This document shows positions 11,175 through 38,697 of a stretch of DNA of 38,856 bases, piece after piece. Within the stretch, counting starts at the first letter, position 1, and each line of letters begins with the position of its first letter. The notes under the pieces are model-generated. The model had not been told where the DNA came from, made no database searches, and saw nothing but the letters and a program-made list of their open reading frames with translations. This stretch comes from Octopus bimaculoides (Eukaryota), in contig NC_069007.1 in the NCBI RefSeq assembly GCF_001194135.2, positions 18,678,879 to 18,717,734 on the forward strand. Reading direction: 5' to 3'. The position numbers were made by a program, and so were the translations under genes.

Positions 11175-12796
11175 ACCACAAACAAAGATAATTATACCCA
11201 CTTACTCACCCACTGGTGAACGTCTTCCAACTTCATCTCTCAGCTACATCCCAAAAACTCTGATGATTCAAGAAGCAACTTACAAGTGGTAGGCAAACTT
11301 TGTAATATATATATATATATATCGTTGCCAGTGCCCCTGGACTGGCTTGTGCGGGTGGCACATAAAAGACACCATTTCGAGCGTGGCCGTTTTCGTGCGG
11401 GTGACACGTAAAAGCACCCACTACACTCTCTGAGTGGTTGGCGTTAGGAAGGGCATCCAGCTGTAGAAACTCGGCCAAATTAGACTGGAGCCTGGTGTTG
11501 CCATCCGGTTTCACCAGTCCTCAGTCAAATCGTCCAACCCATGCTAGCATGGAAAGCGGACGTTAAACGATGATGATGATGATGATGATGATGATGATAT
11601 ATATATGTATATATATATGTATGTATATATCTCAATCCGAAAAATGGAATAAGAACTTAACGAATGACAATAAAAACATACGGACAGATAGACGATACAA
11701 ATACGAATAGGAAAAAACAAGGACAGATCATTTGTGACACGTATATACATACATACATACACTCATATACATGCACATACACATATATATATATACATAC
11801 ACACACACACATCTACATATATGGTAAATCACCAGTACTTTCCTCATATAAACACGTAAATAAATGGTTACACACACAAACACACACATAACCCAATAGT
11901 TAAACCCCAGTATTTTTGACTGTGTAGAAATGTAACATTAGTAAAATACAATTTTCATAGCTACAACATTTTGTGACTATTTCTAAAAGATTTTTTTAAG
12001 TCGTCGTTTATCTTCACAAATGACAAATGGTCCATCACTTATCTTACCCAGATGGTTTCAAACACTTCACAGTTCACACTCATTACCTGTCTGTGATTAA
12101 GACATACTCTGACATTCTAATTTACCTGTCTGCGATTGGTGCTTTTCGATTTTGCCTTCGTATTCATATCCAACAGCACATGAATCCTGGCGATCTTTTT
12201 GCAAACCAAATTTACCGCCGAATCCTTTTGAATAATCTGTGAGATAACAGAAGTCGAGATCCAAGTTTGAGGTTTCTGACTCATATCGCTCACCAGATGT
12301 CACTGAGGGCAGCAGTCTAAACAACACTACGTGCACAAAACGCTCTAAATGTCCTCAGAACATCTCAAAGGTTAATAAAACTGAAGCCACCGCAAACGGT
12401 CCAGGCAGTGTTAGTTGCAAATAAAGCCACACGTATTAGAAGAACTGACTTACTTTAAGACATTACCGTATTTCTTTTCTGGAAGTTACTTACAAGCAGA
12501 GATCAAAGATGAAACCAATCAAAACATACTATAATAAAGAAATATTAAAAAGCAGTTTGTCTCTACAAGAATGAGGTTAATAACTTGAAAGATAGCAATC
12601 TTATTGTTACAATAACTCTAACATAGATGCAAGAGTGTCTGTGTGGTAAGTAGCTTGCTTACCAACCACATGGTTCCGGGTTCAGTCCCACTGCGTGGCA
12701 CCTTGGGCAAGTGTCTTCTACTATAGCCTCGGGCCGACCAAAGCCTTGTGAGTGGATTTGGTAGACGGAAACTGAAAGAAGCCCGTCGTATACATG

Positions 12797-12841
<45 letters not shown>

Positions 12842-15800
12842 GTTTGTCCCCCCAACATCGCTTGACAACCGATACTGGTGTGTTTACATCCCCGTAACTT
12901 CGCGGTTCGGCAGAAGAGACCGATAGAATAAGTACTAGGCTTACAAAGAATAAGTCCTGGGGTCGATTTGCTCGACTAAAGGCGGTGCTCCAGCATGGCC
13001 ACAGTCAAATGACTGAAACAAGTAAAAGAATAAGAGTATACCATTAAATCTTTTATAGGTACAGCACTGTACATTCCAAACACTGATGGTCTGGGACCTC
13101 TAATAATCCATAGTAATTTACAGACAGGAATTTCAAATTCCCATGACTGCCAGACTGTGTAAAAGGATCCCCTTTGGTCATGAATGACCATGGGATTGCA
13201 TCAGGAATGTTTCCCTCTGAGGCACAAGTCCAGGCAAGGTTGTTTATGGAAAACCAGCAGTCGCCCATGCATACCATGCCACCGATATCATCCAAGGGAA
13301 AGGCAAAGGGGCCGATACAGCTCGGTACCAGTGACGTCGTAGCTCATTTCTGTCAGAATTCTCCATTCTCTGAGAGGACCATATTGAGGAGGTAAATGAG
13401 AGTAAGTGAAGGTTATATGCTGTGGGTGGCAGGGGGTACAGATGTTTCAGTGGCTTGATGGATATGAGTGTCGTTCCCTTTAGTTTAGAAATGTAGGCAC
13501 CTAGTTCTAAACCAGTCAGGAATTATGTATAGATCCAGGAATAAGACAATAATGATGATCAGAAAGCAAGACACTCCATATGTAATACAGATGTAAACAT
13601 TTTAAAAAATTATGTTATCAGAAATGAGTTTATCAGTAGGAAAAAATTAATTTAGATATAGATAATTAGATTGAGTGTGTAAAATAATTAGCAAAAATAT
13701 AATTAGATTGGCTAGAATATATTAGGAAAAATATACATTATATTGATTAGATATTCGTTTTTACATTGGTTAAATATTGGATAGTCATAAAAATTTGTTT
13801 CTTTTCAAAGATATTTGAATTGAGACAAAAAATATTTTTATCAAAGCGGTTTATGGTTTTTAGTAATTCTGTTCTTCCTCTACAACTTTGGTTTATCATT
13901 TTTGAAGTTAGAATAAATTTTACCTCTTTTCAGACATATGGCAACGATGTAGAGCCAAGTGGAGAATGATAACGAGCAGGTTCAACACTGGCTTCTCTTT
14001 GCATTCAGTCAAGGTTCCAAAGCTGCCAAATCCGCTTGAGACATTTGTACTGTGTACAGAGGAGGCACTATTATTGAAAGAACTGAACAGAAATGGTTTT
14101 TTATGCTCAAAGGAGATGAAATTCAACCTCACATTCTCTCTACATTCAGGCCCACCTGTTCAGTTCAGTGAAGATTGATTGATTGAATAAGCTCAGCCAC
14201 AAAGGAACTGGCACAACAGATGGGATAATCTCATGATACCATTGCCTTGATACCATGATACCACCTTCCCTTGATGGATGAAGTCCAAACACACTGGTTG
14301 GTGACACAGCTTGCTTCTCCGACACAACATCGAAAAATACCTTAGGAACGAGAACCCAGGTTTGAAATTTCCCCAAAACACCTGATGAAGGCTGGGGGGT
14401 ATATCAGCTGAAATGTGTTAACAACAAACAAGATGAGGACAAATATCCATCAAATGTAAATAATATACATAATTCCTCATCTCTTAAATATAGAACTGGA
14501 TAATTAACCAGTTATCTACATAATTAACTAATGTATATTTAATTAAATCTCATCTAGGTCATCCCATAGAACGCCCCAATATTTAATTAAAGTATATGAA
14601 ACGTGTTAACAAAATGAGGACAAATATCTGTCACATGTAAATAATGGTAAATTATCTTCATTAATTATCTTTCTACTTTTACATTGGTTAAAAATGTATT
14701 TAAACAAGTTAAATAATTATCTTTACATATATTTTTACTTGGATTAAATAAATAAACAACTTTTCAAACTTTGATTATTTATAAATTTCTGTATCAGCTA
14801 AATATGAGCTTTAATCGTATATTTTTACTTAATTAAAAATCTACAATTTACAGAGATAATACATGATTTAATTAGATACATATTTTTTTTTACATTGGTT
14901 TAATATGCAATACTTTGACAGTGTTAAAATATTTATTTTATATTGATTAAGTATATATTTTATATTAATTACATACGAAGCAACACAACAAGGAACTAAC
15001 CAAAAAGAAAAGCCACACACAAGTGATAAAAATGAAAGCAGTGAACAAGAATAAAACAAAAAAAAAGAAAAACTCAAAGATTGGCAGAAAATCTTTAACC
15101 ATTTTCTAATCTTAGTTATTAATGAAATGCCCTCTTCATATATATCTGAATTAGTTTTGAAAATAATCAGCAATTCGGATGAAATGAGGTGGCGTTTAAA
15201 AGAGTATAAATGGGAAATTCCTGCATGAAATTCCTCTTGGAAGGTTTATATTTAAATATGAACACTTCAAAATGAATAAGTTTTGTATCCTAGAACCAGA
15301 AGTGGTTCTAGGATACAGGTGGGTTGGCACCATAGAACCAGAAGTGGTGGCCTCTGATTGATATTATAAAGCCAACAAGTGGTGAGTCTCAGATACGTTG
15401 ATTCCTGGAAACCAGAGGTGTTCATCTTAGATGAGTTGGCATCATAGAACCAGAAGTGGTGGCCTCAAGTGGAATGGTTTCATAGAACCAGAAGTAGCGT
15501 CTCAGATTCATGCAGAATCAGAAGTGAAGGTCTTGGGTGGACAGGCCAGTGCCAAATGATTAATTTACCAACTAGATTTTATTTTCTGTATTTCATTCCG
15601 ATTTTTTTTTGTTTGTTCTTTTTTTAAAGATTTTGTTTGTGTTTTTTTTTTTGCCAATTGTTTTTGAACAAACAACCCCCGGGGGGTAGGGGAAGGGGTC
15701 ACCTGAACTAGGTGTGGTATTTTACAACCATGATCAGCAGCCTGGCAGACTGGACAACTGTGATGATGTGACTTAAGATATTAAAAATGGAATGGGTTAT

Positions 15801-18800
15801 GAGGTGGTGGTGGTGGTGGTGTGTCTGTCATTGGGTCAGATGTAATTGATAGTTGTAGTTGATAGATGACAATGACGATGACAATAGTGTTGATGATGAT
15901 GATGATGATGATGATGATGACAGTTATATAAGAGTAGAAAAGGCACAATGTGGTGAGGATGATGGTGATGATAATGATAATGATGTTGATGGTGGTGATG
16001 ATGACAATGTTGATGATGATACTGACAATGGATATGATGACAATGATTATGATGATGACAGCAACACATGATGACGATGATGATGATTGTGGTAATTTTT
16101 CTTTTCTTTTCCATGTGAGATTAGTAAAAAAAAGTCACAAGTGACCACCACCAAGGATTGTTAGGCTATTAGGGTATGTACCCCAGTCCTCAAAATGATG
16201 GAAGTCAAAGTCAAGAAAGAGAATTGAAGTCAGAAAGTGCTAGGTATTGTATTTTGTCTTGTACAAGACATTCAGTTTGTGTGTGCATGTGTGTGTGTGT
16301 GTGTGTGTGTGTTAGCTGAATCAATACCAAGCACTACTTCTCTAAAATCTGAAGCTAATGCATGCATTTCACAAATCTGGATAAGTACCGATGCCATGAA
16401 GAGATAAGAGTGCTAACATTTCGAGTAAAAAAGCCCTTTATCGAGGAGAGAAAACTTTTTTTTAATTTAAAAAAAAAGTTCCCTCTCCAATGAAGGACAT
16501 TATTCGAAACAAAAGTTTTCTTGTAGTTGGTGGCTGGGTGTTTAACCAAAGGTCAGCCCTAATTGGGTAGACCTAATATGAAAAGCATTCCAACCACAAC
16601 CATCCAGCCTATTATGTACAGAGAACCTGGGGCAACATTTTCCAATGAGTCCTTCTTTTTTTTTAAGATGACAAGGTATGATTTGAAGCTGATTTGGCTG
16701 TTATTTCTAGTAGAACAAGCAACTATGTAAAGCTTCCTTCATTGGGTTCATCTGGATTCTTATCTCATCAAGCCATAGGGACTGATCCAAATTTGTGACC
16801 TTTATTAAATGATTTAATCTACACCAAACACTACTAGTTTCCTTCAACTCTCATCTATATTAATACATGCAATATTTGTCTCAGCACAGAACATATCAGG
16901 AAAAACACACACACAAAAAAAAAGAAAAAAAAAACGTAATTAATAAATTTAACAAAATGGCAAATATTAAAAAATAAATAAATAAAACAGTAAAATATCA
17001 AGAATTTTCAAATGTTGATTTAGGATACTTCTCTTCTACAAATTCTTGCATCAGGAACTGATAGGTAAAAGCATTTCACATTTAACCCTTTAGCATTCGG
17101 TTTATCAAATGAAATGTTTATTTATTCCTTGTTTTGAATTAATCATATATTTTCTTCTAGCTTTGAGATTTCAATGATGTGGCTGTTTATTTTAAGATGA
17201 CATTGTAGGATATGTGTGAGAGGCCAGATCTGGCTGGTTTGAACACAAAACAGATAATGTATTGAGGCTAGATATGGCTGGTTTAAATGCTAAAGGGTTA
17301 ACCCTTTTGTTACCATATTTCTGTTAAGATACTCTGTATTTCTTTCAATTAATTTTAAATATAACAAAGAATTTAGTAAAATAACTTAGTTATCATTAAG
17401 CTAGTGTCAGGAACATAAATTGTGACTAAGGATTGGTGGAAGATTTTAATTCAAAACTTATGGAAACAAGACATTTGTACTACAGAGCCAGAGGCAGTTT
17501 CAGCCAGTTTGGTATCAAAAGGGTTAAGAATTGTTTCTCTGTTATATATTTTAACCCTTTTGTTATCATATTTCTGTTGAGATGTTCTCTGTTTCTTTCA
17601 ATTAATTTTAAATATAACAAAGAATTTAGTAAAATAACTTAGTTACCATTAAGCTAGTGTTAGGAACATAAATTGTGACTAAGGTTTGGTGGAAGATTTT
17701 AATTCCAAATACATGAAAACAAGACATTTGTACTACAGAGCCAGAGGTGATTTCAGACGAGCTGGTATCAAAAGGGTTAAAGAACCATAATTATTGAACT
17801 GGTGATTCAAAACTGTTTTTACTAAATTTTACCAAAGTTTTTCTCAAGTCATTTCTGACACTTTAAAGATGTTCTAAGGTGGGTTTCTTTCTTTTTTTTT
17901 CTCTCTCATTTTCTGTGCCAGAGTTACAACCAGAACAGGGCAGAAGAGAATAACTTGCTTCATTACTTTATTAACCCATCGACCAGAGACAGGCCAGTTT
18001 TTAGTCCTTTTCCATGTTTTACACAAAGAACAACTCACTAGAAACACTAGACTGCACTACTACATCCCCACCTGACCCCGGTCCAGAGAGTGTGGGGTAG
18101 GGAGGAGAGGAAGAGAACGTGGAGGAGAGACAGAGAGACAGACAGAAGAGAAAAAAGACAGAGAGGAGAGAGAGGAGACAAAGAGATGAGAGAGACAGAG
18201 AAAGATGAGAGAAGAGACAGAGAAAGATGAGAGAAGAGACAGAGCAGTGAGAGAGACAGATAGACTGACAGAGGCAAGGGTAAAGAGGGAGAGGACTGCA
18301 TTAGCCACCCCAGCCCAGCCCCACTCCAAGTAGTGACCTACCTGTCTGAGACTCGTGTTTCTGAACTTTTCCTTCGTACTCCCAGCCAACAGCCGAACTG
18401 TCCTGCCTGTCCTTCTGCACACCAAATTTTCCACCGAAACCTTTACTGTAATCTGGCAGAGAGAGAGAGAGAGAGATAGAGTCAAAGAGACAAGAGGATA
18501 AGCATAAAATAAAACAAGGAGTACAGCATGTATAAGGGGAGGAGTAAGAGAAAAGGGGAGAAAGAGAGCGAGTGTTATGTCACAGATAGTGGACGTGTGT
18601 TTGTGTCATGGCATGTCAATCAACACAAACACACGTCCACTATCTGTGACATATACACACACATAGACTTTGCACTCTCTAAGAAAAAAAAATCATTGAA
18701 TTTTTGACATACACAATATTTTAATCATTTAGAAATATTTAAAACTGAATGTGATTTCAAAAATGTAAGTTGTTTGTACAGTAAGTATTTATATTTTAGC

Positions 18801-19660
18801 TTTCTTTAAACAGACGATATTTTAATGTTTTTAAAAATTATTTTCAAGTGAATGGTGATCTTTCGCTTTGACTCTCAGAACTGTCATCCAGAGTTCGTTA
18901 ATTTCCGTAAAAATATTTTATTTATTCACTTTTATTTTAAAGTGAAAGAGAGGAGAAAGTGAAAGATGTATTTTGGGAGACTGAACCATGTGTATAGCAG
19001 TTCAGTCTCCCTTGTACTCAACAGACAATATTACAAAATAAAGAATTGGCAATGACAGCAGAGCTCAAAATCAAAGGTTATCAAAACAGGAAAAAACCAG
19101 ATCTAAATAGCACCATCTGGTGGCAGAGAACCATTACATACCTTTCTGTGACTCATGCTTCCCTAAATTCTCCTGGTGATCCCATCCGACAGCAGATTTG
19201 TCCATACTCTCAGACTGAACGCCATATTTCCCACCAAATCCTTGAGAATAATCTGTAAGCAAATCATGTTAATTAAAGATATAGTGTTAATTACATATAA
19301 TATCCGTTATGACTGAAAAAAGACAATCGAATCTGATTAGAGAAATGATGCATAGGTTTGAGGTACTTGTTTACCTGTATGGCAAGTCACACCTGCAATG
19401 CTCCACAATTTAAATGGTGGCGATGATCCAGAGATGAAGGACATAGGATCAAATACTACTAGGCAGGGCCTTCATATCAGTGAGCGGGGTAAGTGCACTG
19501 CAAACCCATTAAGAGGAAGGCTCTGAGATGGTGCACAATCTCTCTAGATGGAACCTTGAAACCTACTACCATCTGGTATGTGGAGCGTTTAACTAACAGC
19601 ACCTGCACAAGCAATCAATTTGCAAGTCCCCAAACATTGGCACAAAAACCACATACATAC

Positions 19661-19705
<45 letters not shown>

Positions 19706-21348
19706 AGTCAGTAAATAGTGGGGTTGTGTTAACTGCATGTGGAGAAATAATAGGAAAATGAAAAATAATAGTAAGGCAGAATGCTAAACTGGAAGCATAT
19801 TTTAATAAAGATTTCTAACTGGCTTTTATTGCGAAGCAAATTTTCAAGAAGAGGGAGAATGAAAATGTTTTCTACAAAGAAGTACAAAATGAAAAAAATA
19901 ATATAAAAAAAAATAATATATAAAAAAATAAATATACCAATACATTATATTGTCTTTGAGCTTTTAAAGTTCAATGGTAATCCATGNNNNNNNNNNNNNN
20001 NNNNNNNNNNNNNNNNNNNNNNNNNNNNNNNNNNNNNNNNNNNNNNNNNNNNNNNNNNNNNNNNNNNNNNNNNNNNNNNNNNNNNNNNNNNNNNNNNNNN
20101 NNNNNNNNNNNNNNNNNNNNNNNNNNNNNNNNNNNNNNNNNNNNNNNNNNNNNNNNNNNNNNNNNNNNNNNNNNNNNNNNNNNNNNNNNNNNNNNNNNNN
20201 NNNNNNNNNNNNNNNNNNNNNNNNNNNNNNNNNNNNNNNNNNNNNNNNNNNNNNNNNNNNNNNNNNNNNNNNNNNNNNNNNNNNNNNNNNNNNNNNNNNN
20301 NNNNNNNNNNNNNNNNNNNNNNNNNNNNNNNNNNNNNNNNNNNNNNNNNNNNNNNNNNNNNNNNNNNNNNNNNNNNNNNNNNNNNNNNNNNNNNNNNNNN
20401 NNNNNNNNNNNNNNNNNNNNNNNNNNNNNNNNNNNNNNNNNNNNNNNNNNNNNNNNNNNNNNNNNNNNNNNNNNNNNNNNNNNNNNNNNNNNNNNNNNNN
20501 NNNNNNNNNNNNNNNNNNNNNNNNNNNNNNNNNNNNNNNNNNNNNNNNNNNNNNNNNNNNNNNNNNNNNNNNNNNNNNNNNNNNNNNNNNNNNNNNNNNN
20601 NNATCCAACAGTTAAAACCCAGTACTTTTAATTGTATAGAAGAGTCACAACTGTTAAATACCGTTTTCATTACTACAACATTTTGTGACTGTTTATAAAA
20701 GATTCTTTAAGTTGTTATTCCATCTTGACAAATGACAAAACGATCCATCACTCATTACCTGTTTGTAATTAGACACACTCTGACATTCTCATTACCTGTC
20801 TGCGATTGATGTTTTTCGACTTTGCCTTCATAGTCGTAGCCAACAGCGCACGCATCCTGGTGATCTTTTTGCAGACCAAATTTACCGCCGAATCCTTTTG
20901 AATAATCTGTGAGATAACAGAAGTCGAGATCCAAGTTTGAGGTTTCTGACTCATATCACTCACCAGATGTCACTGAGGGCAGCAAACTAAACAACACTAC
21001 GTGCACAAAACGCTTCAAATGTCCTCAGAACATCTCGAGGGTTAATGAAACTGAAGCCACCGCAAACGGTCCAGGTAGCGTTAGTTGCAACAAAAGCCAT
21101 GTGGAAGGAAGAATTAACTTCGGAGTTAATCCAAGAACTTCACTAAATCTGATAAATAGTGATATACGAGAGTGACTTATAAAGTAATACCATTTTGTTT
21201 AGGACAGGTATAATTACCAACACAGGAACATATACCATACATACATGTGTGTGCGTGTGTATACACACACACATATACATATCTACTTACATATAAATAG
21301 AACATATACACATATACATACCTATATACATACATATATATATATATA

Positions 21349-21388
<40 letters not shown>

Positions 21389-23343
21389 AACATATACATA
21401 TATATACACATATATACATACACACACAACCAGGTTTTTTAGATGCCATGCAGTGGGACTGAACCCAGAAGCTTGTGGTTGGGAAGCAAACTTCTTAGCA
21501 TACTGCTACACCTGCACCTATATGTGTCTATATATATATGTGTGTGTGTGTAAAGGTAAGATCCAAGGATCAAGGTGTAGGAAGTTAGTAAGCTTCAAGC
21601 AATCCATAGAAGGTATTAAAAACAACTTTCAGGAACAGCAGCAGTTTACTGGCGCAGAGGGTTGCGAATTTCCCCCATACTGAAGGTTGCTTTATGGAAG
21701 ACCTGCAGTCACCCATGCATACCAGCCTCCCGTCCCCGTGTCAGTAATGTTGTCCAAGGGAAAGGCAAAGGGGCCGATACAGCTTGGCACCAGTGACGTC
21801 GCAACTCATTTCTACAGCTGAGTGAACTGAAGCAACGGGAAATAAAGTGTCTTGCTCAAGGACAGAGCAAACAGCCCGGTGTGGGAATTGAACTCACTAC
21901 CTCGTGGTTGTGAGCCAAACGCTCTAACCAGTGAGCCATGTGCCTTCGGTAAAAAAAAAAAAACAATAATTGAGAAGACAGAAGAGTGGAATGGAATGAG
22001 AATAGAAGGAAAGAAAGAGAAAGGAAGAAATAATGGTCCGAGGGGCTGGGAGGAATGGAATGAAAGCTAATCTCAACCTTTTTGGGATGCATGTTTCTCC
22101 GTTTCACCTTTATAGGNNNNNNNNNNNNNNNNNNNNNNNNNNNNNNNNNNNNNNNNNNNNNNNNNNNNNNNNNNNNNNNNNNNNNNNNNNNNNNNNNNNN
22201 NNNNNNNNNNNNNNNNNNNNNNNNNNNNNNNNNNNNNNNNNNNNNNNNNNNNNNNNNNNNNNNNNNNNNNNNNNNNNNNNNNNNNNNNNNNNNNNNNNNN
22301 NNNNNNNNNNNNNNNNNNNNNNNNNNNNNNNNNNNNNNNNNNNNNNNNNNNNNNNNNNNNNNNNNNNNNNNNNNNNNNNNNNNNNNNNNNNNNNNNNNNN
22401 NNNNNNNNNNNNNNNNNNNNNNNNNNNNNNNNNNNNNNNNNNNNNNNNNNNNNNNNNNNNNNNNNNNNNNNNNNNNNNNNNNNNNNNNNNNNNNNNNNNN
22501 NNNNNNNNNNNNNNNNNNNNNNNNNNNNNNNNNNNNNNNNNNNNNNNNNNNNNNNNNNNNNNNNNNNNNNNNNNNNNNNNNNNNNNNNNNNNNNNNNNNN
22601 NNNNNNNNNNNNNNNNNNNNNNNNNNNNNNNNNNNNNNNNNNNNNNNNNNNNNNNNNNNNNNNNNNNNNNNNNNNNNNNNNNNNNNNNNNNNNNNNNNNN
22701 NNNNNNNNNNNNNNNNNNNNNNNNNNNNNNNNNNNNNNNNNNNNNNNNNNNNNNNNNNNNNNNNNNNNNNNNNNNNNNNNNNNNNNNNNNNNNNNNNNNN
22801 NNNNNNNNNNNNNNNNNNNNNNNNNNNNNNNNNNNNNNNNNNNNNNNNNNNNNNNNNNNNNNNNNNNNNNNNNNNNNNNNNNNNNNNNNNNNNNNNNNNN
22901 NNNNNNNNNNNNNNNNNNNNNNNNNNNNNNNNNNNNNNNNNNNNNNNNNNNNNNNNNNNNNNNNNNNNNNNNNNNNNNNNNNNNNNNNNNNNNNNNNNNN
23001 NNNNNNNNNNNNNNNNNNNNNNNNNNNNNNNNNNNNNNNNNNNNNNNNNNNNNNNNNNNNNNNNNNNNNNNNNNNNNNNNNNNNNNCTACTCTTTTCGGG
23101 GGACCAAAATGCTGGGGTTGGCAGCACTGCAGTGCCAGCCAGCTCCTGCAATTTTAGCATCCAGTTCAGCATCCAGCCTCCCATCACTTGGAAACAACAT
23201 TAAAAGATGTAAATAAATGATAGGGACTTACCTTGTCTTGGTGGTCTTTCTGAACCCCAAATTTACCTCCAAATCCCTTCGAGAAATCCTTTTGGCTGTT
23301 GTGCACAGAAAGTTTTTCTTGGTGTTCATGACCCAAAGCAGAC

Positions 23344-23378
<35 letters not shown>

Positions 23379-23896
23379 CAACAACAACAACAACAACAAC
23401 AATAATAATAATTTCAAATTTTGGCACAAGGCAAGAAATTTTGAGGGAAGGGGTAAGTCGATTACATTGACCCTTGTCATCTACTGGTACATATTTTATG
23501 ACCCTGAGAGGATGAAAGGCAAATTCGACCTCAATGGAATTTGAACTCAAAATGTAAAGACAGACGAAATGCTGCTAAGCAGTCAGACCATCATGCTAAC
23601 CATTCTGCCAGCTCACTGCCACGTCTAAGGCCACAGTAGATGATATCTGTCCAAAGTGTCATGCAATGAGAACTCAACACCAAACACACGAGTAGTTATA
23701 TATAAAAGTATTAAAACCAGATATGTGAAGCAACACTTACTTTGTCCATTCGATCTTTCTGGACCCCAAATTTACCCCCATAGCCATAAGAAGCTTGAGG
23801 CCCAGCTTCAAATTCTTTCTTCTTGTGAGAGGCATGATCCTGGGCAACTCCCTCTCTCAAAGTGTTCAAGCTGAAAAATTTTTAAACATCAACAAC

Positions 23897-24833: not shown

Positions 24834-25155
24834 TGTAAGAGAGAGTGTGTGTGTGAGAGAGAGAGTGTGTATGTATATTGAATATGTGTGTATGGATGTG
24901 TGTATTTGTAAGTGAGTGTGTGTAAGCGTGTGTGTGTAAGCGTGTGTGTGTGTGTGTGTGTGTTTGAGCGTGTTTGTGTGAGTGCATGTGTGTGTGAGTG
25001 AGTATTTGTGTGTGTGTCTGTGTGTCTGAGTGCGTGTATGCCAGAGAGAGAACTTACCACAAAGTCCGGATCGGTTTCCCAGTCGTCGTCAGCGTCATCG
25101 TTTTTCCCCTCAAACTTAATGTTTGTACCGGCAGCAGCTTTCCACATCTTGGACA
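4009..25155 (-). CDS. CTTN: Cortactin (Src substrate cortactin / HS1 family), multi-exon gene span; 14 coding exons visible, 3' end incomplete
   Basis: Spliced translation gives [45 protein letters not shown]..., tandem GFGGK(F/Y)GxQ repeats, [10 protein letters not shown] helical segment and [17 protein letters not shown]3 start. All visible exons have GT-AG boundaries. Phases are consistent except one junction (23232 to 20906) that needs a missing phase 0-to-1 exon. Visible CDS totals 1973 nt. Confidence 0.97.
4195..4641. mobile_element. Interspersed retroposon 3'-end-like repeat (RTE-like tail, (CAT)n end); two adjacent partial copies
   Basis: catcatcgtttaacgtccgc...ggatgcccttcctaacgccaacc motif recurs at about 9255-9445 and 11320-11600 (opposite orientation), 24480-24600, 28890-29240 and 36420-36660. 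The RTE assignment is from recall, not a search. Confidence 0.6.
4980..5070 (-). CDS. CTTN: Cortactin linker/SH3 start exon (91 nt, phase 0-1)
   Basis: attccag|[31 protein letters not shown]|gtcagt; contains the ALYDY SH3 signature. Confidence 0.92.
6400..6930. repeat. Intronic (GGT/GAT)n trinucleotide low-complexity tract
   Basis: Mixed ggt/gat repeats; source of spurious Gly/Asp, Val/Met and Thr/Ile ORFs. A similar tract lies at 15800-16090. Confidence 0.9.
6994..7371 (-). CDS. CTTN: Cortactin acidic linker exon (378 nt, phase 0-0)
   Basis: tcttttcag|[10 protein letters not shown]...[14 protein letters not shown]...[12 protein letters not shown]|gtaagt; open frame, phases match neighbours. 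Confidence 0.85.
7713..7861 (-). CDS. CTTN: Cortactin helical/coiled-coil exon (149 nt, phase 1-0)
   Basis: catag|(S)[49 protein letters not shown]|gtaagt; resembles vertebrate [24 protein letters not shown]. Confidence 0.93.
8668..8737 (-). CDS. CTTN: Cortactin post-repeat exon (70 nt, phase 0-1)
   Basis: cattccag|[24 protein letters not shown]|gtaag; size and phases fit both neighbours. Confidence 0.88.
9800..10179 (-). CDS. CTTN: Cortactin long repeat exon (380 nt, phase 1-0) with 3.5 repeats
   Basis: ttttag|(D)[126 protein letters not shown]|gtagat. Confidence 0.95.
10514..10751 (-). mobile_element. tRNA-derived SINE family C with target-site duplication
   Basis: Minus-strand head ggcagaatcgttag ... 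gagttcaaattcc and A-rich tail; 11-nt TSD atatcctattt at 10503-10513 and 10752-10762. Related copies at 32352-32577 and about 23405-23620. Confidence 0.8.
12126..12236 (-). CDS. CTTN: Cortactin repeat exon A' (111 nt, phase 1-1), paralogue of exon 20796-20906
   Basis: cacag|(D)[37 protein letters not shown]|gtaaat; intact frame and splice sites. Confidence 0.9.
12632..13030 (+). mobile_element. tRNA-derived SINE family A, full-length copy
   Basis: Head gtgtggtaagtagcttgc...ggttcagtccc, ccttgggcaagtgtc core, internal (TA)n/(TG)n, 3' end gtcaaatgactgaaacaagtaaaaga. Nearly identical to 28173-28552 (+) and 38455-38856 (-). Confidence 0.85.
13980..14215 (+). pseudogene. Mariner transposase N-terminal (HTH) fragment
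   Basis: Translates as [35 protein letters not shown], resembling mariner N-termini; contains stop and frameshifts. Confidence 0.65.
15284..15535. repeat. Degenerate ~35-40-nt tandem array with core catagaaccagaagtgg, headed by a 15-bp hairpin
   Basis: About 7 spaced copies of the core; tgtatcctagaacca-gaag-tggttctaggataca at 15284-15317. Confidence 0.7.
17082..17780. mobile_element. Cluster of three TTAA-flanked (piggyBac-like) MITEs: 17086-17297, 17302-17523, 17555-17776
   Basis: Each reads TTAA|CCCT...AGGG|TTAA. The first two share one TTAA (17298-17301); the second and third are close paralogues. Related ends occur at about 24148, 30799 and 31945. Confidence 0.8.
18342..18452 (-). CDS. 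CTTN: Cortactin repeat exon C (111 nt, phase 1-1)
   Basis: tgccag|(D)[37 protein letters not shown]|gtaggt. Confidence 0.93.
18576..18653. other. Perfect 31-bp inverted repeat with 16-nt loop (intronic hairpin)
   Basis: tatgtcacagatagtggacgtgtgtttgtgt (18576-18606) is the exact reverse complement of 18623-18653. Confidence 0.95.
19142..19252 (-). CDS. CTTN: Cortactin repeat exon B (111 nt, phase 1-1)
   Basis: ttacag|(D)[37 protein letters not shown]|gtatgt. Confidence 0.93.
20796..20906 (-). CDS. CTTN: Cortactin repeat exon A (111 nt, phase 1-1)
   Basis: cacag|(D)[37 protein letters not shown]|gtaatg. Confidence 0.93.
21680..21945 (-). mobile_element. SINE-like repeat family D
   Basis: gggaaaggcaaaggggccgatacagc...gtgtcttgctcaagg; shares its body with 13180-13350. 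Confidence 0.6.
23232..23342 (-). CDS. CTTN: Cortactin coding exon 4 (111 nt, phase 0-0), one repeat
   Basis: tag|[37 protein letters not shown]|gtaagt. Confidence 0.95.
23741..23870 (-). CDS. CTTN: Cortactin coding exon 3 (130 nt, phase 2-0), start of repeat region
   Basis: ttttcag|C TTG...: (S)[43 protein letters not shown]|gtaagt. Confidence 0.95.
24297..24370 (-). CDS. CTTN: Cortactin coding exon 2 (74 nt, phase 0-2)
   Basis: cag|AAT GAC GTG...: [24 protein letters not shown] + AG|gtaaat. Confidence 0.95.
24601..25040. repeat. Compound (TG)n/(AG)n microsatellite in the intron after the first coding exon
   Basis: Directly visible; similar tracts at 25930-26700 (GA-rich), 18110-18270 and 26950-27290. 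Confidence 0.9.
25058..25147 (-). CDS. CTTN: Cortactin first coding exon (N-terminal acidic domain, DDW Arp2/3-binding motif), 30 aa
   Basis: ATG at 25147; [30 protein letters not shown]; donor gtaag at 25057. Acceptor tttccgtcag ends at 25156, so 8 nt of 5'UTR precede the ATG and an upstream non-coding exon must exist. Confidence 0.95.
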
Positions 25156-25860: not shown

Positions 25861-26286
25861 AATAATAATAATAATAATAACATTGAAAAATATCTTAGGA
25901 ATGAGAACCCAGGTTTGAANNNNNNNNNNNNNNNNNNNNNNNNNNNNNNNNNNNNNNNNNNNNNNNNNNNNNNNNNNNNNNNNNNNNNNNNNNNNNNNNN
26001 NNNNNNNNNNNNNNNNNNNNNNNNNNNNNNNNNNNNNNNNNNNNNNNNNNNNNNNNNNNNNNNNNNNNNNNNNNNNNNNNNNNNNNNNNNNNNNNNNNNN
26101 NNNNNNNNNNNNNNNNNNNNNNNNNNNNNNNNNNNNNNNNNNNNNNNNNNNNNNNNNNNNNNNNNNNNNGAGAGAGAGTGGGGGGGGGATTATGGAGAAG
26201 AAGAATAAAAATGGTAAAGAGAAGAGAGAGAGAGGGGGGGAACCTTGAAGATAATACATTGAGGTAGAGAATGTAAGGGAATGGGT

Positions 26287-26627: not shown

Positions 26628-28172
26628 GTTGGAGAGAGAGAGAGAGGTTGGAGAGAGAGAGAGAGAGAGAGGTTGGAGAGAGAGAAAGAGAGACATGCTG
26701 GACAATTAGGGATGGTTTACTACTACTTCTACTACTTCTACTAGTCACGCAATGGTGAGGTAAGTGCTAACATACTTGATGTTGGAAAGTCAGGCCAAGA
26801 TATTTTAATTAACCAGAATCACACTCCCTTAATGAAACAGACAAACAAAAAAAAAAAGAAAAAACAATTGTTTTTTTTCTTCTTCTTCCTTTTGTAAATG
26901 GCTGTTGTGTCTGGTAAAGGCAGGGGGAGACAACCCCCGAAATGTTAATTAATGCATACAAACAAACACACACACACTCACATACATGAACCAACAGCGA
27001 GAGATGGCTGGACTCCATACATACGTGCATAGATACAAATACTACACAGCCAAACATAGACACACACACACATACACAGACTTATGCATACATTCATACA
27101 TATACACACACATACAGGAACCAACACCAAGAGATGGCCGGACTCCACACACATGTATATACATATACTCATTATACAACCATATATAACACCCACACAC
27201 GTGTGTGAGTACATGTATGTATGAATATATGTGTGTGTGTGTGTGTGAATATGTGTGTGTGTGTGTGTGTGTATGTGTGTGTGTGTGGTGCATGGCTTAG
27301 TCGTTGGATTTTTCATGTTTGATGTAAGAAATCTTAGCAGTGTTTAAAATTTTACCTGAAGATGGGGGATTCTATGTTAGAATGTAATCTATGAACACAT
27401 CAATAAAATTCTACCAAATTTACGTTCTATTTTCATTCATTCATGTATGCATGCATGCATACATACACACATACATACATACCTGGCCAGGTAACCTTGT
27501 GCCTCCTCTACAGCAAGACACCTGTTTCTGTCTCTTTGTCTCGTTACAACCTTTCATCATCGGAGAAGGTGATCGTGTGTCAGATGATGAAAGGTCATAG
27601 TGAGACAGAGAGACAAAAATAGGAGTCTTGCTGTGGAGGAGGTACAAAGTTACCTGGCTGGAGAGAGGGGGGGGGGAGAGCATACTACCTACATTTCTCT
27701 CCAGTCTACACATGCCTTCTGCATTCAGAGCCTATGTCTCACCACCATGGAGTATAGCCATTCCCACAAAAGCATCATACAGTCTACCTTTCACTCTGAG
27801 GGAGAAAGAGAGTCCTTTTGTTGCTCAAAAGGTGCTTTTTACATGCCACCAGCACACTTGCTAGTTCCACGACGTCAGCATTGGCCACCTGGCCTCCATG
27901 AGGTCCAACGCTCGAATGGTGCCTTTTACAGCATGGGTGCCAATTACGTGACACCAACAATGGTCACAACTATGATTTCACTTGGCTCAACAAGTCTTCG
28001 TAAGCACAGCATATTACCAAATGTCTCAGTCACTAGTCATTGCTTCCGTGAGGCCCAACGTTTGAAGATCATGCTTCACCACCTCATTCCATGTCTTCCT
28101 GGGTCTCTCTCTTCCACAACTTCCTTCCATTGGTAGAAATTGGCACTTCTTCATACAGCTATCCCACATTCA

Positions 28173-28552
28173 GGAGTGGCTGTGTGGTAAGTAGCTTGCT
28201 TACCAACCACATGGTTCCGGGTTCAGTCCCACTGCGTGGCACCTTGGGCAAGTGTCTTCTACTATAGCCTCGGGCCGACCAAAGCCTTGTGAGTGGATTT
28301 GGTAGACGGAAACTGAAAGAAGCCCGTCGTATATATGTATATGTGTGTGTGTGTGTGTGTCTGTGTTTGTCCCCCCAACATCGTTTGACAACCGATGCTG
28401 GTGTGTTTACATCCCTGTAACTTAGCGGTTCGGCAAAAGGAGACCGATAGAATAAGTACTAGGCTTACAAAAGAATAAGTCCTGGGGTCGATTTGCTCGA
28501 CTAAAGGCGGTGCTCCAGCATGGCCACAGTCAAATGACTGAAACAAGTAAAT
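28173..28552 (+). mobile_element. tRNA-derived SINE family A, full-length copy
   Basis: Near-identical to 12632-13030. Confidence 0.85.
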
Positions 28553-29409
28553 AAATGAGTAACTGAGTATCACATGACCATACCAACCGAGTTGTCTCTC
28601 TTGCGCACCACATCTCATGCCTCTTATGTCCATCTTTTCTTTCAAGACACTTATACTCTGTCATACATGATGTCAAGTTAAACTCTCCCATTTTCTTGAA
28701 GACAGCAAACCCAATACGGGCTTCAATGTCGCTAATGTATTCATTCAGTTTAACTTTTAATTAAGCAATGTTATTATCTTTCTTTCACGAATTTGCTGTT
28801 ATCTTGACTTCTTTTGATTGTTTTTGTAATATATTCATCTTTGTCCATGATAACAAACAAGTTACACTTATCAATTCAACAAATTATAATATCATCATCA
28901 TCATCTTCATTATCGTTCGGCATGGGTTGGACGGTTTGACTGAAAACTGATAAGCTGAGGAGATGCACCAGGTTCTAATCTGACTTGGCATGGTTTCTAC
29001 GGCTGGATGTCCTTCCTAATGCCAACCACTCTGAGAGTGTAATGGGTGCTTTTTATGTGCCACAGGCATGGGTTCCAGTTACGCAACATTGGCATTGGCC
29101 ACGACGACGATCTCACTTGACTTGACAGGTCTTCTCAAGCATGGTATATCGCCAAAAGTCTTGGTTACTCATCACTGCCTCTGTGGAGCCCAACATTTCA
29201 ATGGTGCTTTTTACATGCCACCAGCACAGGTACCAGTTATGCAACACTGACATCAGCCACAATTCACTATTTTTCAAGTCCTACAGAGCTTGTGTGAGGT
29301 TTTTCTTGTCCTTTTGTCACTATTTTCCTTTCACAAATGAATGAACCTCACAGCTTGTAATACTTTTATCGCTAAGCATTTTAATCTTTTTACTGTAGAA
29401 ATCATTCCT

Positions 29410-31790: not shown

Positions 31791-32069
31791 ATGCATTATC
31801 TCGTAGCTTGCAGATTTTGATAATGTGACTATTTTTAGAGTGACATTGTACAGTAGATATGAGAGGCCTGATCAGGCCAGTTTGTACAAAAAAAAAAACT
31901 CAAAACATTCAGGCCTGATATATCTGGTTTGGATACTAAAGGTTAAATATCTGTGGTTTTCTGTTTGCTTTGTCATTTTTCACAAAGCTGAATAACTGGG
32001 GCATAACAATTTCAGAATAAACGCTTAAATTGTTCACAAGGAAGTTTTAGCAAAATAGACACATTACTC

Positions 32070-32261
32070 TTTTACCTGTTTCAGTCATTTGACTGCGGCC
32101 ATGCTGGAGCATCGCCTTTTAGTCGAGCAAATCGATCCCAGGACTTATTCTTTGTAAGCCTAGTACTTATTCTATCGGTTCTCTTTTGCCGAACTGCTAA
32201 GTTACGGGGACATAAACACACCAGCATCGGTTGTCAAGCGTTGTTGGGGGGACATACAAAC

Positions 32262-32306
<45 letters not shown>

Positions 32307-32630
32307 NNNNNNNNNNTACATATACATATATACGACGGGCTTCTTTCAGTTCCCTATTTCTTTATTGCCCACAAGGAGCTAAACAGAGGGGACAAACAAG
32401 GACAGACAAATGGATTAAGTCGGTTAGATCGACCCCAGTGCGCAACTGGTACTTTATTTATCGACCCTGAAAGGATGAAAGGCAAAGTCGACCTCGGCGG
32501 AATTTGAACTCACAACGTAATGGCAGACAAAATACCGCTAAGCATTACACCTGGCATGCTAACGTTTCTGCCAGCTCGGCTTCTTTCAGTTTCCGTCTAC
32601 CAAATCCACTCACAAGGCTTTGGTCAGCCC
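32070..32630 (-). mobile_element. SINE family A copy interrupted by a nested SINE family C insertion (32352-32577)
   Basis: 14-nt direct repeat ggcttctttcagtt at 32338-32351 and 32578-32591 flanks the inserted element. Confidence 0.85.
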
Positions 32631-33913
32631 ATGAGACAGAGAGATGAAAAAGGCGTCTTGCTGTAGAGCTGGTACAAGGTTACCCGGCCGGAGAGAGAGA
32701 AAGAGAGATTGGGAATGAGGACAGAAATGAGAGTAAAAATGGATAAGTAGTTGGTATTAGATTCTGGCACTTAATTCAGGACACAGTGCAAGTGTTACAG
32801 GAGTGGTTTGGCTGGGGTAGTGAGTGAATTTTTGTCCTCTCTCTTTCTAGTGGCATAGCTTGGATTTTGGCCAGCCCAGGCAGAAGCCATACTGAATGCC
32901 TTTTTCATGAAACATAATTTACATTCATTTGCAGCAAACACTCATTTGTAATGTGGCCACCCTGTGCAGTCAACTGCACACTGCACATGCAACACAATTG
33001 TCCACACTTCCTCGCCATCTCTCTCTCTCCTTCTCTTCCTATCTCTCTCTCTCCTTCTCTTCCTATTTCTCTCTCTTTCCCCATCTCTCTCCATCTTTTT
33101 CTCCCCATTTCTCTCTCTTCACAGAAACTGATAGAGGCTTATTGCGCGTGTGTCCTACTCCTACTCAACAACGAGTGTTGGTCCCCGTAACTTAGCAGTT
33201 CAGCTAAAGAGACCGATAGAACAAGTATCACGCTTTACAAAAAAGTAAATCCTGGGATCAAAGATTGCCCAAGGTTCCACGCAGTGGGACTGATCCCAGA
33301 ACCATGTGGTTAGGAAGCAAGCTTCTTACCAGACAGCCATATATACATACATACATATAATATATATATATATATATATATNNNNNNNNNNNNNNNNNNN
33401 NNNNNNNNNNNNNNNNNNNNNNNNNNNNNNNNNNNNNNNNNNNNNNNNNNNNNNNNNNNNNNNNNNNNNNNNNNNNNNNNNNNNNNNNNNNNNNNNNNNN
33501 NNNNNNNNNNNNNNNNNNNNNNNNNNNNNNNNNNNNNNNNNNNNNNNNNNNNNNNNNNNNNNNNNNNNNNNNNNNNNNNNNNNNNNNNNNNNNNNNNNNN
33601 NNNNNNNNNNNNNNNNNNNNNNNNNNNNNNNNNNNNNNNNNNNNNNNNNNNNNNNNNNNNNNNNNNNNNNNNNNNNNNNNNNNNNNNNNNNNNNNNNNNN
33701 NNNNNNNNNNNNNNNNNNNNNNNNNNNNNNNNNNNNNNNNNNNNNNNNNNNNNNNNNNNNNNNNNNNNNNNNNNNNNNNNNNNNNNNNNNNNNNNNNNNN
33801 NNNNNNNNNNNNNNNNNNNNNNNNNNNNNNNNNNNNNNNNNNNNNNNNNNNNNNNNNNNNNNNNNNNNNNNNNNNNNNNNNNNNNNNNNNNNNNNNNNNN
33901 NNNNNNNNNNNNN

Positions 33914-38454: not shown

Positions 38455-38648
38455 CTTTTACTCGTTTCAGTCATTTGACTGCGGCCATGCTGGGGCACCG
38501 CCTTTTAGTTGAGCAAATCGACCCCAGGTTTTATTCTTTGTAAGCCTAGTACTTATTCTAATGGTCTCTTTTTGCCGAACCACTAAGTTACGGGGGACGT
38601 AAACACACCAGCCTCGGTTGTCAAGCGAAGTTGGGGGGACAAACACAG

Positions 38649-38697
<49 letters not shown>

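What the first reader, a model, noticed from the sequence alone, without database searches (positions are those of the whole stretch)
11893..21080. Non-adjacent duplicated repeat exon whose upstream intron is more conserved than the exon
Seen: exons 20796-20906 (A) and 12126-12236 (A') are paralogues 8.7 kb apart, separated by two other repeat exons (order A-B-C-A'). By hand count they differ at 12 of 111 nt (4 aa: H/R, A/S, D/E, V/I). The ~190 nt of upstream intron (12241-12429 versus 20911-21099) differs at only about 12 positions. An 83-nt block spanning the acceptor (12205-12287 versus 20875-20957) is identical. Looser homology continues downstream (about 11893-12125 versus 20603-20795). 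Inference: either partial gene conversion has homogenised the 3' splice-site region, or a shared intronic splicing element is conserved. The latter could be a common selector pairing with one docking site, as in mutually exclusive exon clusters such as Dscam.
Basis: partly seen in the sequence, partly recalled or inferred. Interest (0 to 1): 0.7.

Follow-up and report, generated by a model that had tools for sequence, protein, structure and literature searches.

The report
Duplicated cortactin repeat exon, patchy divergence
Two copies of one 111-base exon of the actin-binding protein cortactin, each with about 540 bases of flanking intron, sit 8.7 kb apart in the same gene; the stretch around the upstream splice site has stayed far more alike than the rest, most likely because one copy was pasted over the other (gene conversion), which is ordinary behaviour for repeated exons.

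Summary
The gene is a cortactin/HS1 homologue on the minus strand. A (20796-20906) and A' (12126-12236) are two of four 111-nt, phase 1-1 exons, each encoding one 37-aa actin-binding repeat, in the order A-B-C-A'.

At least 540 bp are duplicated, and divergence across them is significantly uneven:
- about 6% in the 193 nt of upstream intron;
- 0% over 83 nt across the acceptor;
- 15% in the rest of the exon (8 of about 15 silent sites differ);
- about 10% in the proximal downstream intron;
- 24-30% in the distal downstream intron, plus indels.

This is not a neutral one-step duplication, and it is not a haplotig. Both copies are under purifying selection (dN/dS about 0.09).

The best explanation is an older segmental exon duplication followed by intragenic gene conversion of about 225 bp (confidence 0.5). 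The rival is a lineage-specific splicing-control block kept by selection (about 0.27).

The Dscam-type selector/docking idea is not supported:
- the exons are not adjacent;
- no complementary site exceeds chance;
- no stable RNA structure or Rfam family was found;
- the block is absent beyond about 18 nt of the splice site in the one related species I could fetch.

Transcripts and close-relative genomes were not available, so conversion versus constraint stays open.

The parts
20796..20906 (-). Exon A: 111-nt, phase 1-1 cortactin repeat exon ([37 protein letters not shown]). It is the first of the four 111-nt exons.
   Evidence: Translation and splice sites (ag|ATTATT ... CAG|gtaatg). Pfam HS1_rep.
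12126..12236 (-). Exon A': the paralogue of A ([37 protein letters not shown]). It is the fourth 111-nt exon and lies just upstream of the multi-repeat exon.
   Evidence: 99/111 nt identical to A, dN/dS about 0.09. Pfam HS1_rep.
20907..21099 (-). Upstream-intron block of A: 193 nt, 45.6% GC, 12 differences from the A' copy, no indel. Homology ends sharply at 21099.
12237..12429 (-). Upstream-intron block of A': 193 nt, 44.6% GC. Homology ends sharply at 12429. A young interspersed repeat lies further upstream at 12627-13034.
20875..20957 (-). 83-nt stretch identical to 12205-12287. It spans 51 nt of intron (polypyrimidine tract, AG) and the first 32 nt of the exon. It is the youngest part of the low-divergence zone.
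   Evidence: identity; permutation P = 5.5e-4.
12205..12287 (-). The A' copy of the 83-nt identical stretch.
20603..20795 (-). Downstream-intron homology of A. About 10% divergence in the first ~70 nt, then 24-30%. It includes a second donor-like CAGGTAATG about 37 nt downstream. It is cut off by the assembly gap.
11893..12125 (-). Downstream-intron homology of A', with a 41-nt insertion relative to A. It ends at an (AC)n microsatellite (11870-11889).
19987..20602 (.). Assembly gap in the intron between exon A and exon B. No reading frame crosses it. It hides the downstream end of the A duplicate.
22078..22116 (-). 3' end of the preceding short repeat exon (...[12 protein letters not shown], phase-1 donor G|gttgag). 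The gap 22117-23086 cuts it off. It lies on the same 1.5-kb contig as exon A.
   Evidence: It matches the '[12 protein letters not shown]' end of repeat 2 in vertebrate cortactin.
19142..19252 (-). Exon B: 111-nt repeat exon ([37 protein letters not shown]). No intron homology to A or A'.
18342..18452 (-). Exon C: 111-nt repeat exon ([37 protein letters not shown]). It differs from both A and A' at 32 of 111 nt. No intron homology to either.
9800..10179 (-). Multi-repeat exon: one 37-aa repeat, two 36-aa repeats and a half repeat, with no introns.
   Evidence: The same architecture is seen in L001.
23232..23342 (-). 111-nt exon encoding the second half of repeat 1 and the first half of repeat 2.
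25058..25147 (-). First coding exon ([30 protein letters not shown]) with the DDW Arp2/3-binding motif. It shows that the whole gene lies in the window; the SH3 exons are at about 4987-5080 and 4000-4060.

Best explanation
A and A' are two of the four 111-nt exons that each encode one 37-residue F-actin-binding repeat of a cortactin (HS1/cortactin family) gene on the minus strand.

A segment of at least 540 bp (exon, about 190 nt of upstream intron, at least 190-230 nt of downstream intron) was copied within the gene. This happened long enough ago for unconstrained sites to diverge by roughly 25-40%. Both copies have since been kept as working coding exons.

Later, one or more intragenic (ectopic) gene-conversion events copied about 225 bp from one paralogue onto the other. 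This tract runs from the upstream edge of the duplicated segment through the acceptor into exon nt 32. The last event left 83 identical bases.

Shown: the gene identity, the duplication, the significant mosaic of divergence, and purifying selection on both exons. Inferred: that the mosaic was produced by conversion rather than by selection on the intron.
For: Gene identity.
- Pfam HS1_rep E = 6e-124 with 7 repeats. Hits are cortactin/HS1 proteins throughout.
- An N-terminal DDW exon and SH3 exons lie in the window.
- 111-nt repeat exons match the published cortactin gene structure (PMC554100).

Duplication.
- A single alignment, E = 3e-153. Flanks outside 11893-12429 and 20603-21099 are unrelated apart from interspersed repeats.
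- A and A' are sister copies. Each differs at 32 of 111 nt from exon C and at 25 of 111 nt from the A-type exon of the related locus L001. The polarised changes split 4:4.

Both exons are functional: 4 non-silent changes in 86.5 sites against 8 silent in 21.5 (P = 2.4e-4), and both have intact canonical splice sites.

Mosaic.
- Low zone 12/225 against distal downstream intron 30/123, P = 5e-7.
- Identical-run permutation P = 5.5e-4 and breakpoint P = 5e-4.
- Silent exon sites are homogenised together with the intron: 0/6.7 against 8/14.8, P = 0.02. A conversion tract predicts this; protein-level selection does not.
- No indels in the low zone against several downstream.
- The low zone stops exactly where homology stops, as expected if heteroduplex cannot extend beyond the duplicated segment.

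No sign of function in the block.
- No Rfam family and no Pfam domain in its open frames.
- No fold more stable than shuffles.
- No complementary partner in the pre-mRNA.
- No similarity to the upstream intron of the related exon in L001 beyond about 18 nt.
Against: - Only one genome was available, so conversion and selective constraint predict the same pairwise pattern.
- The profile is low-high-low-high: upstream intron, exon 3' part, proximal downstream intron, distal downstream intron. That needs more than one tract, or selection against homogenising the exon's 3' two-thirds. A 'conserved exon-flanking intron' model explains it with one cause.
- The block has exon-like GC (45% against 27-31% in neighbouring intron). 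Conversion alone does not explain that.
- L001 is distant: its exons are only 73-79% identical, so neutral sites are saturated. Its lack of the block therefore argues only against deep conservation, not against a lineage-specific element.
- Five of the 12 upstream differences fall in adjacent or near-adjacent pairs. This is unexplained.
Confidence: 0.5

Rival explanations
1. The roughly 225-nt block, and perhaps the first ~70 nt of downstream intron, is a lineage-specific cis-acting splicing-control region. It was duplicated with the exon and kept by purifying selection in both copies, so that both A-type repeat exons respond to the same factors as co-regulated cassette exons. This would resemble the regulated skipping of repeat exons 10 and 11 in vertebrate cortactin.
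For: - Conserved intron on both sides of the exon, with free silent sites in between, is what regulated alternative exons typically show (established knowledge). The profile is low-high-low-high.
- The block diverges (6.2%) about as little as the non-silent exon sites (4.6%), has no indels and has exon-like GC.
- Repeat-exon skipping is documented for cortactin in mammals, birds and frogs and changes F-actin binding (PMC554100).
- About 18 nt at the acceptor are shared with the related species L001.
- All four 111-nt exons are phase 1-1, so any of them can be skipped in frame.
Against: - Beyond about 18 nt the block has no above-chance similarity to the intron upstream of the corresponding exon in L001, or to anything else in that 20-kb locus.
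- No known RNA family, stable structure or complementary partner was found.
- Identity at all silent sites of exon nt 1-32 would need extra RNA-level constraint.
- No transcript evidence was available.
Confidence: 0.27
2. The block is a Dscam-type selector. The shared intron sequence of A and A' would compete for base-pairing with a single docking site, so that only one of the two exons is included (mutually exclusive splicing).
For: Two same-length homologous exons carry near-identical sequence just upstream of the acceptor. About 2.2 kb of the gene is unread in gaps and could hide a partner.
Against: - A and A' are not adjacent; exons B and C lie between them.
- Both are 3n and phase 1-1, so joint inclusion stays in frame.
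- The best G-U-tolerant ungapped helix between the block and the readable pre-mRNA (3900-25200) scores 32. The mean of 200 dinucleotide shuffles is 35.2, and 92% of shuffles do at least as well.
- BLASTN finds no inverted match.
- The block is not conserved in L001.
Confidence: 0.03
3. Assembly artefact: the 1.5-kb contig carrying A is a misplaced or divergent copy (haplotig or collapsed repeat) of the A' region, and the gene has only one A-type exon.
For: - Exon A lies on a short contig (20603-22116) bounded by gaps on both sides.
- The window has 9 gaps.
- The homology abuts the gap edge.
Against: - The contig also carries the end of the preceding, different repeat exon in the correct orientation and phase. 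A' has no such neighbour.
- Homology is confined to about 540 bp, with unrelated flanks.
- Divergence of 19-30% plus a 41-nt indel downstream is far above allelic variation.
- dN/dS of 0.09 shows long independent maintenance.
- With A the gene has four 111-nt exons, the same number as in L002 and in human cortactin (PMC554100).
Confidence: 0.06
4. A one-step duplication with regional differences in mutation rate. The exon 3' part and the downstream intron would mutate faster because they lie next to an indel-prone, microsatellite-bearing stretch. No conversion or constraint would be involved.
For: The fast zone contains a 41-nt indel and smaller indels, and abuts an (AC)n microsatellite.
Against: A 4- to 6-fold rate difference over 300 bp is large. 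The proximal downstream intron, next to the indels, is again low (about 10%). An 83-nt run with no change is unlikely even at the slow rate once the scan is allowed for.
Confidence: 0.04

Closest known systems
Vertebrate cortactin (CTTN/EMS1) repeat exons 8-11, including the exon 10 to exon 11 duplication and splice variants SV1/SV2 (PMC554100)
   Same: - Same protein family and gene layout: repeats 1-2 are split across exons, followed by a run of four 111-nt exons each encoding one 37-aa repeat.
- Repeat number grew by exon duplication.
- All repeat exons are in-frame cassettes.
   Different: - Here the two closest paralogues occupy the first and fourth positions (A-B-C-A'), not adjacent ones.
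- About 430 nt of flanking intron is still recognisably duplicated.
- The gene carries an extra intron-less exon with 3.5 repeats.
- Alternative splicing of A or A' was not tested.
Intragenic or interlocus (ectopic) gene conversion between duplicated exons or segments
   Same: - A contiguous tract of a few hundred bp is much more alike than the neighbouring duplicated sequence.
- The tract covers intron and silent sites alike.
- The copies lie a few kb apart on the same strand.
   Different: The diagnostic tree conflict (paralogues grouping by species inside the tract and by locus outside it) could not be tested. The mosaic needs more than one event.
Docking-site/selector competing RNA structures in mutually exclusive exon clusters (Drosophila Dscam exon 6, and similar cases)
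   Same: Homologous exons of equal length have a similar sequence upstream of each acceptor.
   Different: - The exons are not adjacent.
- Only two copies exist.
- No docking complement exceeds chance.
- The shared block is 193 nt at 94% identity (a duplication remnant) rather than a short conserved core within otherwise diverged introns.
Conserved intronic flanks of regulated cassette exons
   Same: Sequence on both sides of the exon diverges less than the silent exon sites and the distal intron.
   Different: The comparison here is between paralogues in one genome. In the only cross-species comparison available (L001) conservation stops about 18 nt from the acceptor.

Membership tests
Cortactin/HS1 gene (F-actin-binding repeat domain) | Tandem 37-residue HS1/cortactin repeats | tested here: met
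   Pfam PF02218 HS1_rep, E = 6.1e-124, 7 stretches in the concatenated exons. A' alone gives E = 5e-18.
Cortactin/HS1 gene (F-actin-binding repeat domain) | N-terminal acidic DDW Arp2/3-binding motif and C-terminal SH3 domain in the same gene | tested here: met
   MWKAAAG...[14 protein letters not shown] at 25058-25147. ALYDYEA and [13 protein letters not shown] exons at about 4987-5080 and 4000-4060. The SH3 domain is incomplete because of gap 4642-4947.
Cortactin/HS1 gene (F-actin-binding repeat domain) | Repeats encoded by in-frame 111-nt exons | tested here: met
   A, B, C, A' and the exon at 23232-23342 are 111 nt with AG/GT boundaries; A, B, C and A' are phase 1-1. Matches PMC554100 and L002.
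Ectopic gene-conversion tract between paralogous segments | Contiguous stretch significantly more alike than the rest of the duplicated segment | tested here: met
   Identical run of 83 nt, permutation P = 5.5e-4. Breakpoint test P = 5e-4. Low zone against distal intron P = 5e-7.
Ectopic gene-conversion tract between paralogous segments | Homogenisation ignores coding status: silent exon sites and intron are affected alike | tested here: met
   0 of about 6.7 silent sites differ in exon nt 1-32, against 8 of about 14.8 in the rest (P = 0.02).
Ectopic gene-conversion tract between paralogous segments | Tree conflict: paralogues group by species inside the tract and by locus outside it | not testable with these tools
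   No close relative could be reached. L001 covers only the A' position and its introns are unalignable. At exon level A and A' are equidistant from the L001 exon. That fits concerted evolution or a younger duplication.
Ectopic gene-conversion tract between paralogous segments | GC-biased signature in the tract | tested here: inconclusive
   The block is 45% GC against 27-31% in neighbouring intron. The excess is too large to come from conversion of a few differing sites, and there is no outgroup to polarise the changes.
Dscam-type mutually exclusive exon cluster (docking site / selector) | Variant exons form an uninterrupted tandem array | tested here: not met
   Exons B and C lie between A and A'.
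Dscam-type mutually exclusive exon cluster (docking site / selector) | Selector upstream of each variant is complementary to one docking site in the pre-mRNA | tested here: not met
   Best helix score 32 against a shuffle mean of 35.2 (sd 3.5) over the readable pre-mRNA 3900-25200. Gaps were not searchable and only ungapped helices were scored.
Dscam-type mutually exclusive exon cluster (docking site / selector) | Transcripts contain exactly one of the variants | not testable with these tools
   No transcript data for this species or for a close relative was found.
Regulated cassette exon with conserved intronic flanks | Flanking intron conserved in orthologues | tested here: not met
   Against L001 only about 18 nt at the acceptor are shared. 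The rest is at shuffle level (P = 0.21-0.31). Caveat: L001 is distant (exon identity 77-79%).
Regulated cassette exon with conserved intronic flanks | Alternative inclusion observed in transcripts | not testable with these tools
   No transcript data.

The most novel reading that the evidence does not exclude
The 225-nt block is a lineage-specific splicing-control module. It was copied together with the exon and is held nearly unchanged by selection at both places. As a result the first and fourth 111-nt repeat exons of cortactin would be included or skipped as a coordinated pair (or as alternatives), giving tissue-specific control of the number of actin-binding repeats.
Probability: 0.2. Interest if true: 0.5.

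Novelty: new member of a known kind. Interest (0 to 1): 0.25.

Why it matters
Cortactin's affinity for F-actin and its effect on cell migration depend on how many 37-residue repeats it carries. Vertebrates tune that number by exon duplication and exon skipping (PMC554100). This locus shows the same evolutionary process caught at an intermediate stage in an invertebrate: a repeat exon copied with its introns, both copies kept by selection, and part of the copy still being homogenised or constrained. If the intron block turned out to be functional, it would be an example of a splicing-control element spreading by exon duplication. If it is conversion, it is an ordinary case of concerted evolution. 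It is mainly useful as a caution that intron similarity between paralogous exons is not evidence of function.

Tried and rejected
Searches for relatives and transcripts.
- Two protein searches with the repeat region and with the non-repeat parts returned only distant cortactins of at most about 60% identity, mostly vertebrate. No close relative and no transcript-derived isoform was found.
- A search with off-frame and intron-derived ORFs of the shared block, meant to catch genomic ORFs of relatives, found nothing.
- Exact look-up of seven possible ORFs of the multi-repeat exon found none in the collection. No second assembly of this species could be reached.
- The 10-kb flank limit stopped me from reading further upstream in the L001 contig. 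Whether that species also has an A-type exon in the first position is unknown.

Tests of the shared block, all negative.
- Known RNA families: nothing in the block. The only nearby matches are weak chance-level ones, CRISPR-DR50 and ceN22.
- Intronic snoRNA or microRNA idea: no family match, and no fold more stable than shuffles.
- ADAR-type exon-intron duplex (RNA editing): local folds have z-scores of -0.7 and -1.1. A hairpin over the acceptor has z-scores of -0.2 and -0.8. The one exon-intron helix seen in A is broken in A'. Rejected for lack of support.
- Antisense or alternative coding: one + strand frame is open in both copies (at least 58 and 85 codons). It has no Pfam match and 7 of 58 residues differ. 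An in-frame 51-nt pseudo-exon in A' is out of frame in A. Rejected.
- Docking-site search: nothing above chance. A first attempt with RNAduplex timed out.

Tests of other origins of the pattern.
- Conversion of A or A' by exon C, B or R7: A and A' are equidistant from C and show no donor signature.
- Larger duplication including further upstream intron: only interspersed-repeat matches were found.

Full report
**What is there**

The region belongs to one gene on the minus strand, and the whole gene lies in the window.
- The first coding exon (25058-25147) encodes MWKAAAG...[14 protein letters not shown], the acidic DDW motif of cortactin.
- SH3 exons lie at about 4987-5080 and 4000-4060.
- The concatenated middle exons match Pfam HS1_rep (the repeat of HS1/cortactin) at E = 6e-124 with seven stretches.
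- All database hits are cortactin or HS1 proteins.

The repeat domain is laid out as in vertebrate cortactin (PMC554100).
- Repeats 1 and 2 are split over three exons: 23741-23870, 23232-23342, and a short exon of which only the end, 22078-22116, is read.
- Four 111-nt exons follow, each encoding one repeat: A 20796-20906, B 19142-19252, C 18342-18452 and A' 12126-12236.
- Last comes an intron-less exon (9800-10179) with 3.5 further repeats.
- A, B, C and A' all have AG/GT boundaries and are phase 1-1.

**The observation**

- 12 of 111 exon differences: 4 amino-acid changes and 8 silent changes.
- 12 differences in the 189-193 nt of upstream intron, with no indel.
- An identical 83-nt stretch across the acceptor.
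- Looser homology downstream: 36 mismatches in 190 columns plus 46 gap columns, including a 41-nt indel.
- The whole segment is one BLASTN alignment with E = 3e-153. No other part of the window matches it, apart from exon-only similarity to the other repeat exons.
- Homology ends sharply at 12429/21099. Further upstream, both copies hold unrelated sequence and different interspersed-repeat insertions.

**The gap**

The gap 19987-20602 lies in the intron between A and B, so no reading frame crosses it. The A/A' homology runs to within 2 nt of the gap edge. That is the point where A' carries an (AC)n microsatellite. The contig probably broke at the same repeat, and the true downstream end of the duplicate is unknown.

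Exon A lies on a 1.5-kb contig (20603-22116) with gaps on both sides. That contig also holds the end of the preceding repeat exon (...[12 protein letters not shown], the counterpart of vertebrate '...[12 protein letters not shown]' of repeat 2) in the right orientation and phase.

Four observations argue strongly against a haplotig or misplaced copy:
- the neighbouring exon on the same contig;
- the unrelated flanks;
- 19-30% divergence with indels in the downstream intron;
- a dN/dS of about 0.09 between the copies (4 changes in 86.5 non-silent sites against 8 in 21.5 silent sites, P = 2.4e-4).

With A, the gene has four 111-nt exons. That is the same number as in a more distant invertebrate locus (L002) and in human cortactin.

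**Is the intron really 'more conserved than the exon'?**

As raw counts (12/111 against 12/193) the difference is not significant (P = 0.19). The proper comparison is with unconstrained sites, and there it is clear.
- Silent-site difference in the exon is 0.37, against 0.062 in the upstream intron (P = 1.3e-4).
- The downstream intron is at 0.19 (P = 1.7e-4 against the upstream intron).

Along the alignment, in gene order, divergence runs as follows:
- about 8% from 21099 to 20958;
- 0% over 83 nt;
- 15% in exon nt 33-111;
- about 10% in the first ~70 nt of downstream intron;
- 24-30% beyond that.

An identical run of 83 nt has permutation P = 5.5e-4. The best single breakpoint has P = 5e-4. 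Within the exon, none of about 6.7 silent sites differs in nt 1-32, against 8 of about 14.8 in the rest (P = 0.02). The refutation condition 'intron and synonymous divergence statistically equal' is therefore not met. This is not a simple neutral duplication.

**History of the copies**

A and A' are each other's closest relatives. Each differs from exon C at 32 of 111 nt.

Through a fragment found in the representative search (P0262) I fetched a 20-kb locus of a related species (L001; ENA ERZ21867824, contig ctg104047l).
- It has the same 3.5-repeat exon.
- 3.2 kb upstream of that exon it has one A-type 111-nt exon ([37 protein letters not shown]).
- A and A' each differ from this exon at 25 of 111 nt. 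The polarisable differences split 4:4.
- The A-type exon next to the multi-repeat exon is therefore older than the split of the two species.
- A and A' coalesce after that split. Either A is a younger copy, or the two have evolved in concert.
- The part of the L001 contig that would show which is true lies beyond the 10-kb flank limit.

**Tests of a functional intron element**

- Rfam finds nothing in the block.
- The open frames in it have no Pfam match and no coding-like substitution pattern.
- Folding 351 nt around each exon, or 96 nt around each acceptor, gives energies within one standard deviation or so of dinucleotide shuffles (z from -0.2 to -1.1).
- I searched the readable pre-mRNA (3900-25200) for a G-U-tolerant helix with the 193-nt block. 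The best score was 32. Shuffled blocks average 35.2, and 92% of them do at least as well. No docking site is visible.
- In L001 the acceptor-proximal ~18 nt are recognisably the same (TTYTGTTAT..CTCACAG). The rest of the block has no above-chance similarity to the upstream intron (P = 0.21-0.31) or to anything else in the locus.
- L001 is distant (exons 73-79% identical). This rules out deep conservation only.

**Explanation**

The evidence fits best an older copy of a segment of at least 540 bp, followed by ectopic gene conversion of about 225 bp.
- The tract is bounded upstream by the edge of the duplicated segment.
- It is bounded downstream by a point inside the exon.
- The 83 identical bases are the trace of the most recent event.
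- Conversion explains why silent exon sites and intron are homogenised together, why there are no indels, and why the low zone ends where homology ends.

Conversion does not easily explain two things:
- the second, weaker low zone just downstream of the exon;
- the exon-like GC content of the block (45% against 27-31% around it).

A lineage-specific splicing-control region, duplicated with the exon and kept by selection, would explain those two points and remains a serious rival. Ordinary constraint on the branch point and polypyrimidine tract probably contributes to the proximal ~20-50 nt in either case.

The Dscam-like selector/docking version is not supported:
- the exons are not adjacent;
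- joint inclusion stays in frame;
- no complement is found.

**Verdict**

This is a real feature, correctly described. Its kind is known: repeat-exon duplication in cortactin, with probable concerted evolution. It is a new example rather than a new mechanism. The question that remains open (conversion or constraint, and whether A and A' are alternatively spliced) needs transcripts and close-relative genomes. Neither could be reached with these tools.

Noticed in passing
window 9800-10179 (-); L001 9885-10273 (+): One intron-less exon encodes a 37-aa cortactin repeat, two shorter 36-aa repeats (DM[NK]KGFGGK.G.Q....DK.ALSY......TELH.SQ.D) and a half repeat. The related locus L001 has the same 3.5-repeat exon. 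L002 and many other genomic fragments have only 1.5 repeats there. This suggests a lineage-specific in-exon repeat expansion, giving about 9.5 repeats in all against 6.5 in vertebrates.
   Followed up: partly
window 12079-12094 and 20752-20763 (-), about 37-39 nt downstream of the donors of A' and A: Both copies carry a second donor-like copy of the exon end (ACAGACAGGTAATGAG / ACAAACAGGTAATGAG). Using it would add 39 nt containing a stop codon (A') or 37 nt causing a frameshift (A). It could be a decoy or an unproductive alternative 5' splice site.
   Followed up: partly
window 12283-12297 and 20953-20967 (-): The shared block contains a consensus 5' splice-site-like motif (CTG|GTGAGC in A', CTG|GTGAGT in A) about 62 nt upstream of the acceptor. 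In A' it could close an in-frame 51-nt pseudo-exon; in A it is out of frame. There is no evidence that it is used.
   Followed up: partly
window 12315-12316, 12345-12346, 12367/12369, 12406/12409, 12421-12422: Ten of the 12 upstream-intron differences between A and A' fall in five adjacent or near-adjacent pairs. That is more clustering than independent point changes at 6% divergence would give. The cause is unknown (multi-nucleotide mutations or patchy mismatch repair).
   Followed up: no
window 12627-13034, 28168-28559, 38454-38855, 32064-32306: Several 87-92% identical copies of an interspersed repeat of about 400 bp lie in both orientations. One sits just upstream of the A' block. Other repeat families recur at 10515-10743/32355-32578 and 11348-11586/4320-4579.
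   Followed up: partly
window 21881-21938 (-): Weak tRNA-like match (Rfam RF00005, 30.5 bits, just above threshold) in the intron upstream of exon A. ARAGORN finds no tRNA. It is probably the head of a tRNA-derived SINE.
   Followed up: partly
window 677-1663, 3116-3671, 4642-4947, 6590-6599, 19987-20602, 22117-23086, 25920-26169, 32307-32316, 33382-33913: There are nine assembly gaps in 38.9 kb, most of them next to TA/CA microsatellites. Gap 22117-23086 cuts the short repeat-2 exon and gap 4642-4947 cuts the SH3 coding region. Any annotated protein from this assembly will therefore be incomplete.
   Followed up: partly
window 6385-7200 (both strands): A long low-complexity stretch lies in an intron or the 3' part of the gene. 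Its open frames are rich in G/D (+ strand) or in P/S/T/H (- strand). It may include the proline-rich linker of cortactin or may be a simple repeat.
   Followed up: no
L001 18261-18758 (-): A reverse-transcriptase (RVT_1) ORF, indicating a retroelement, lies downstream of the cortactin repeat exons in the related locus.
   Followed up: no
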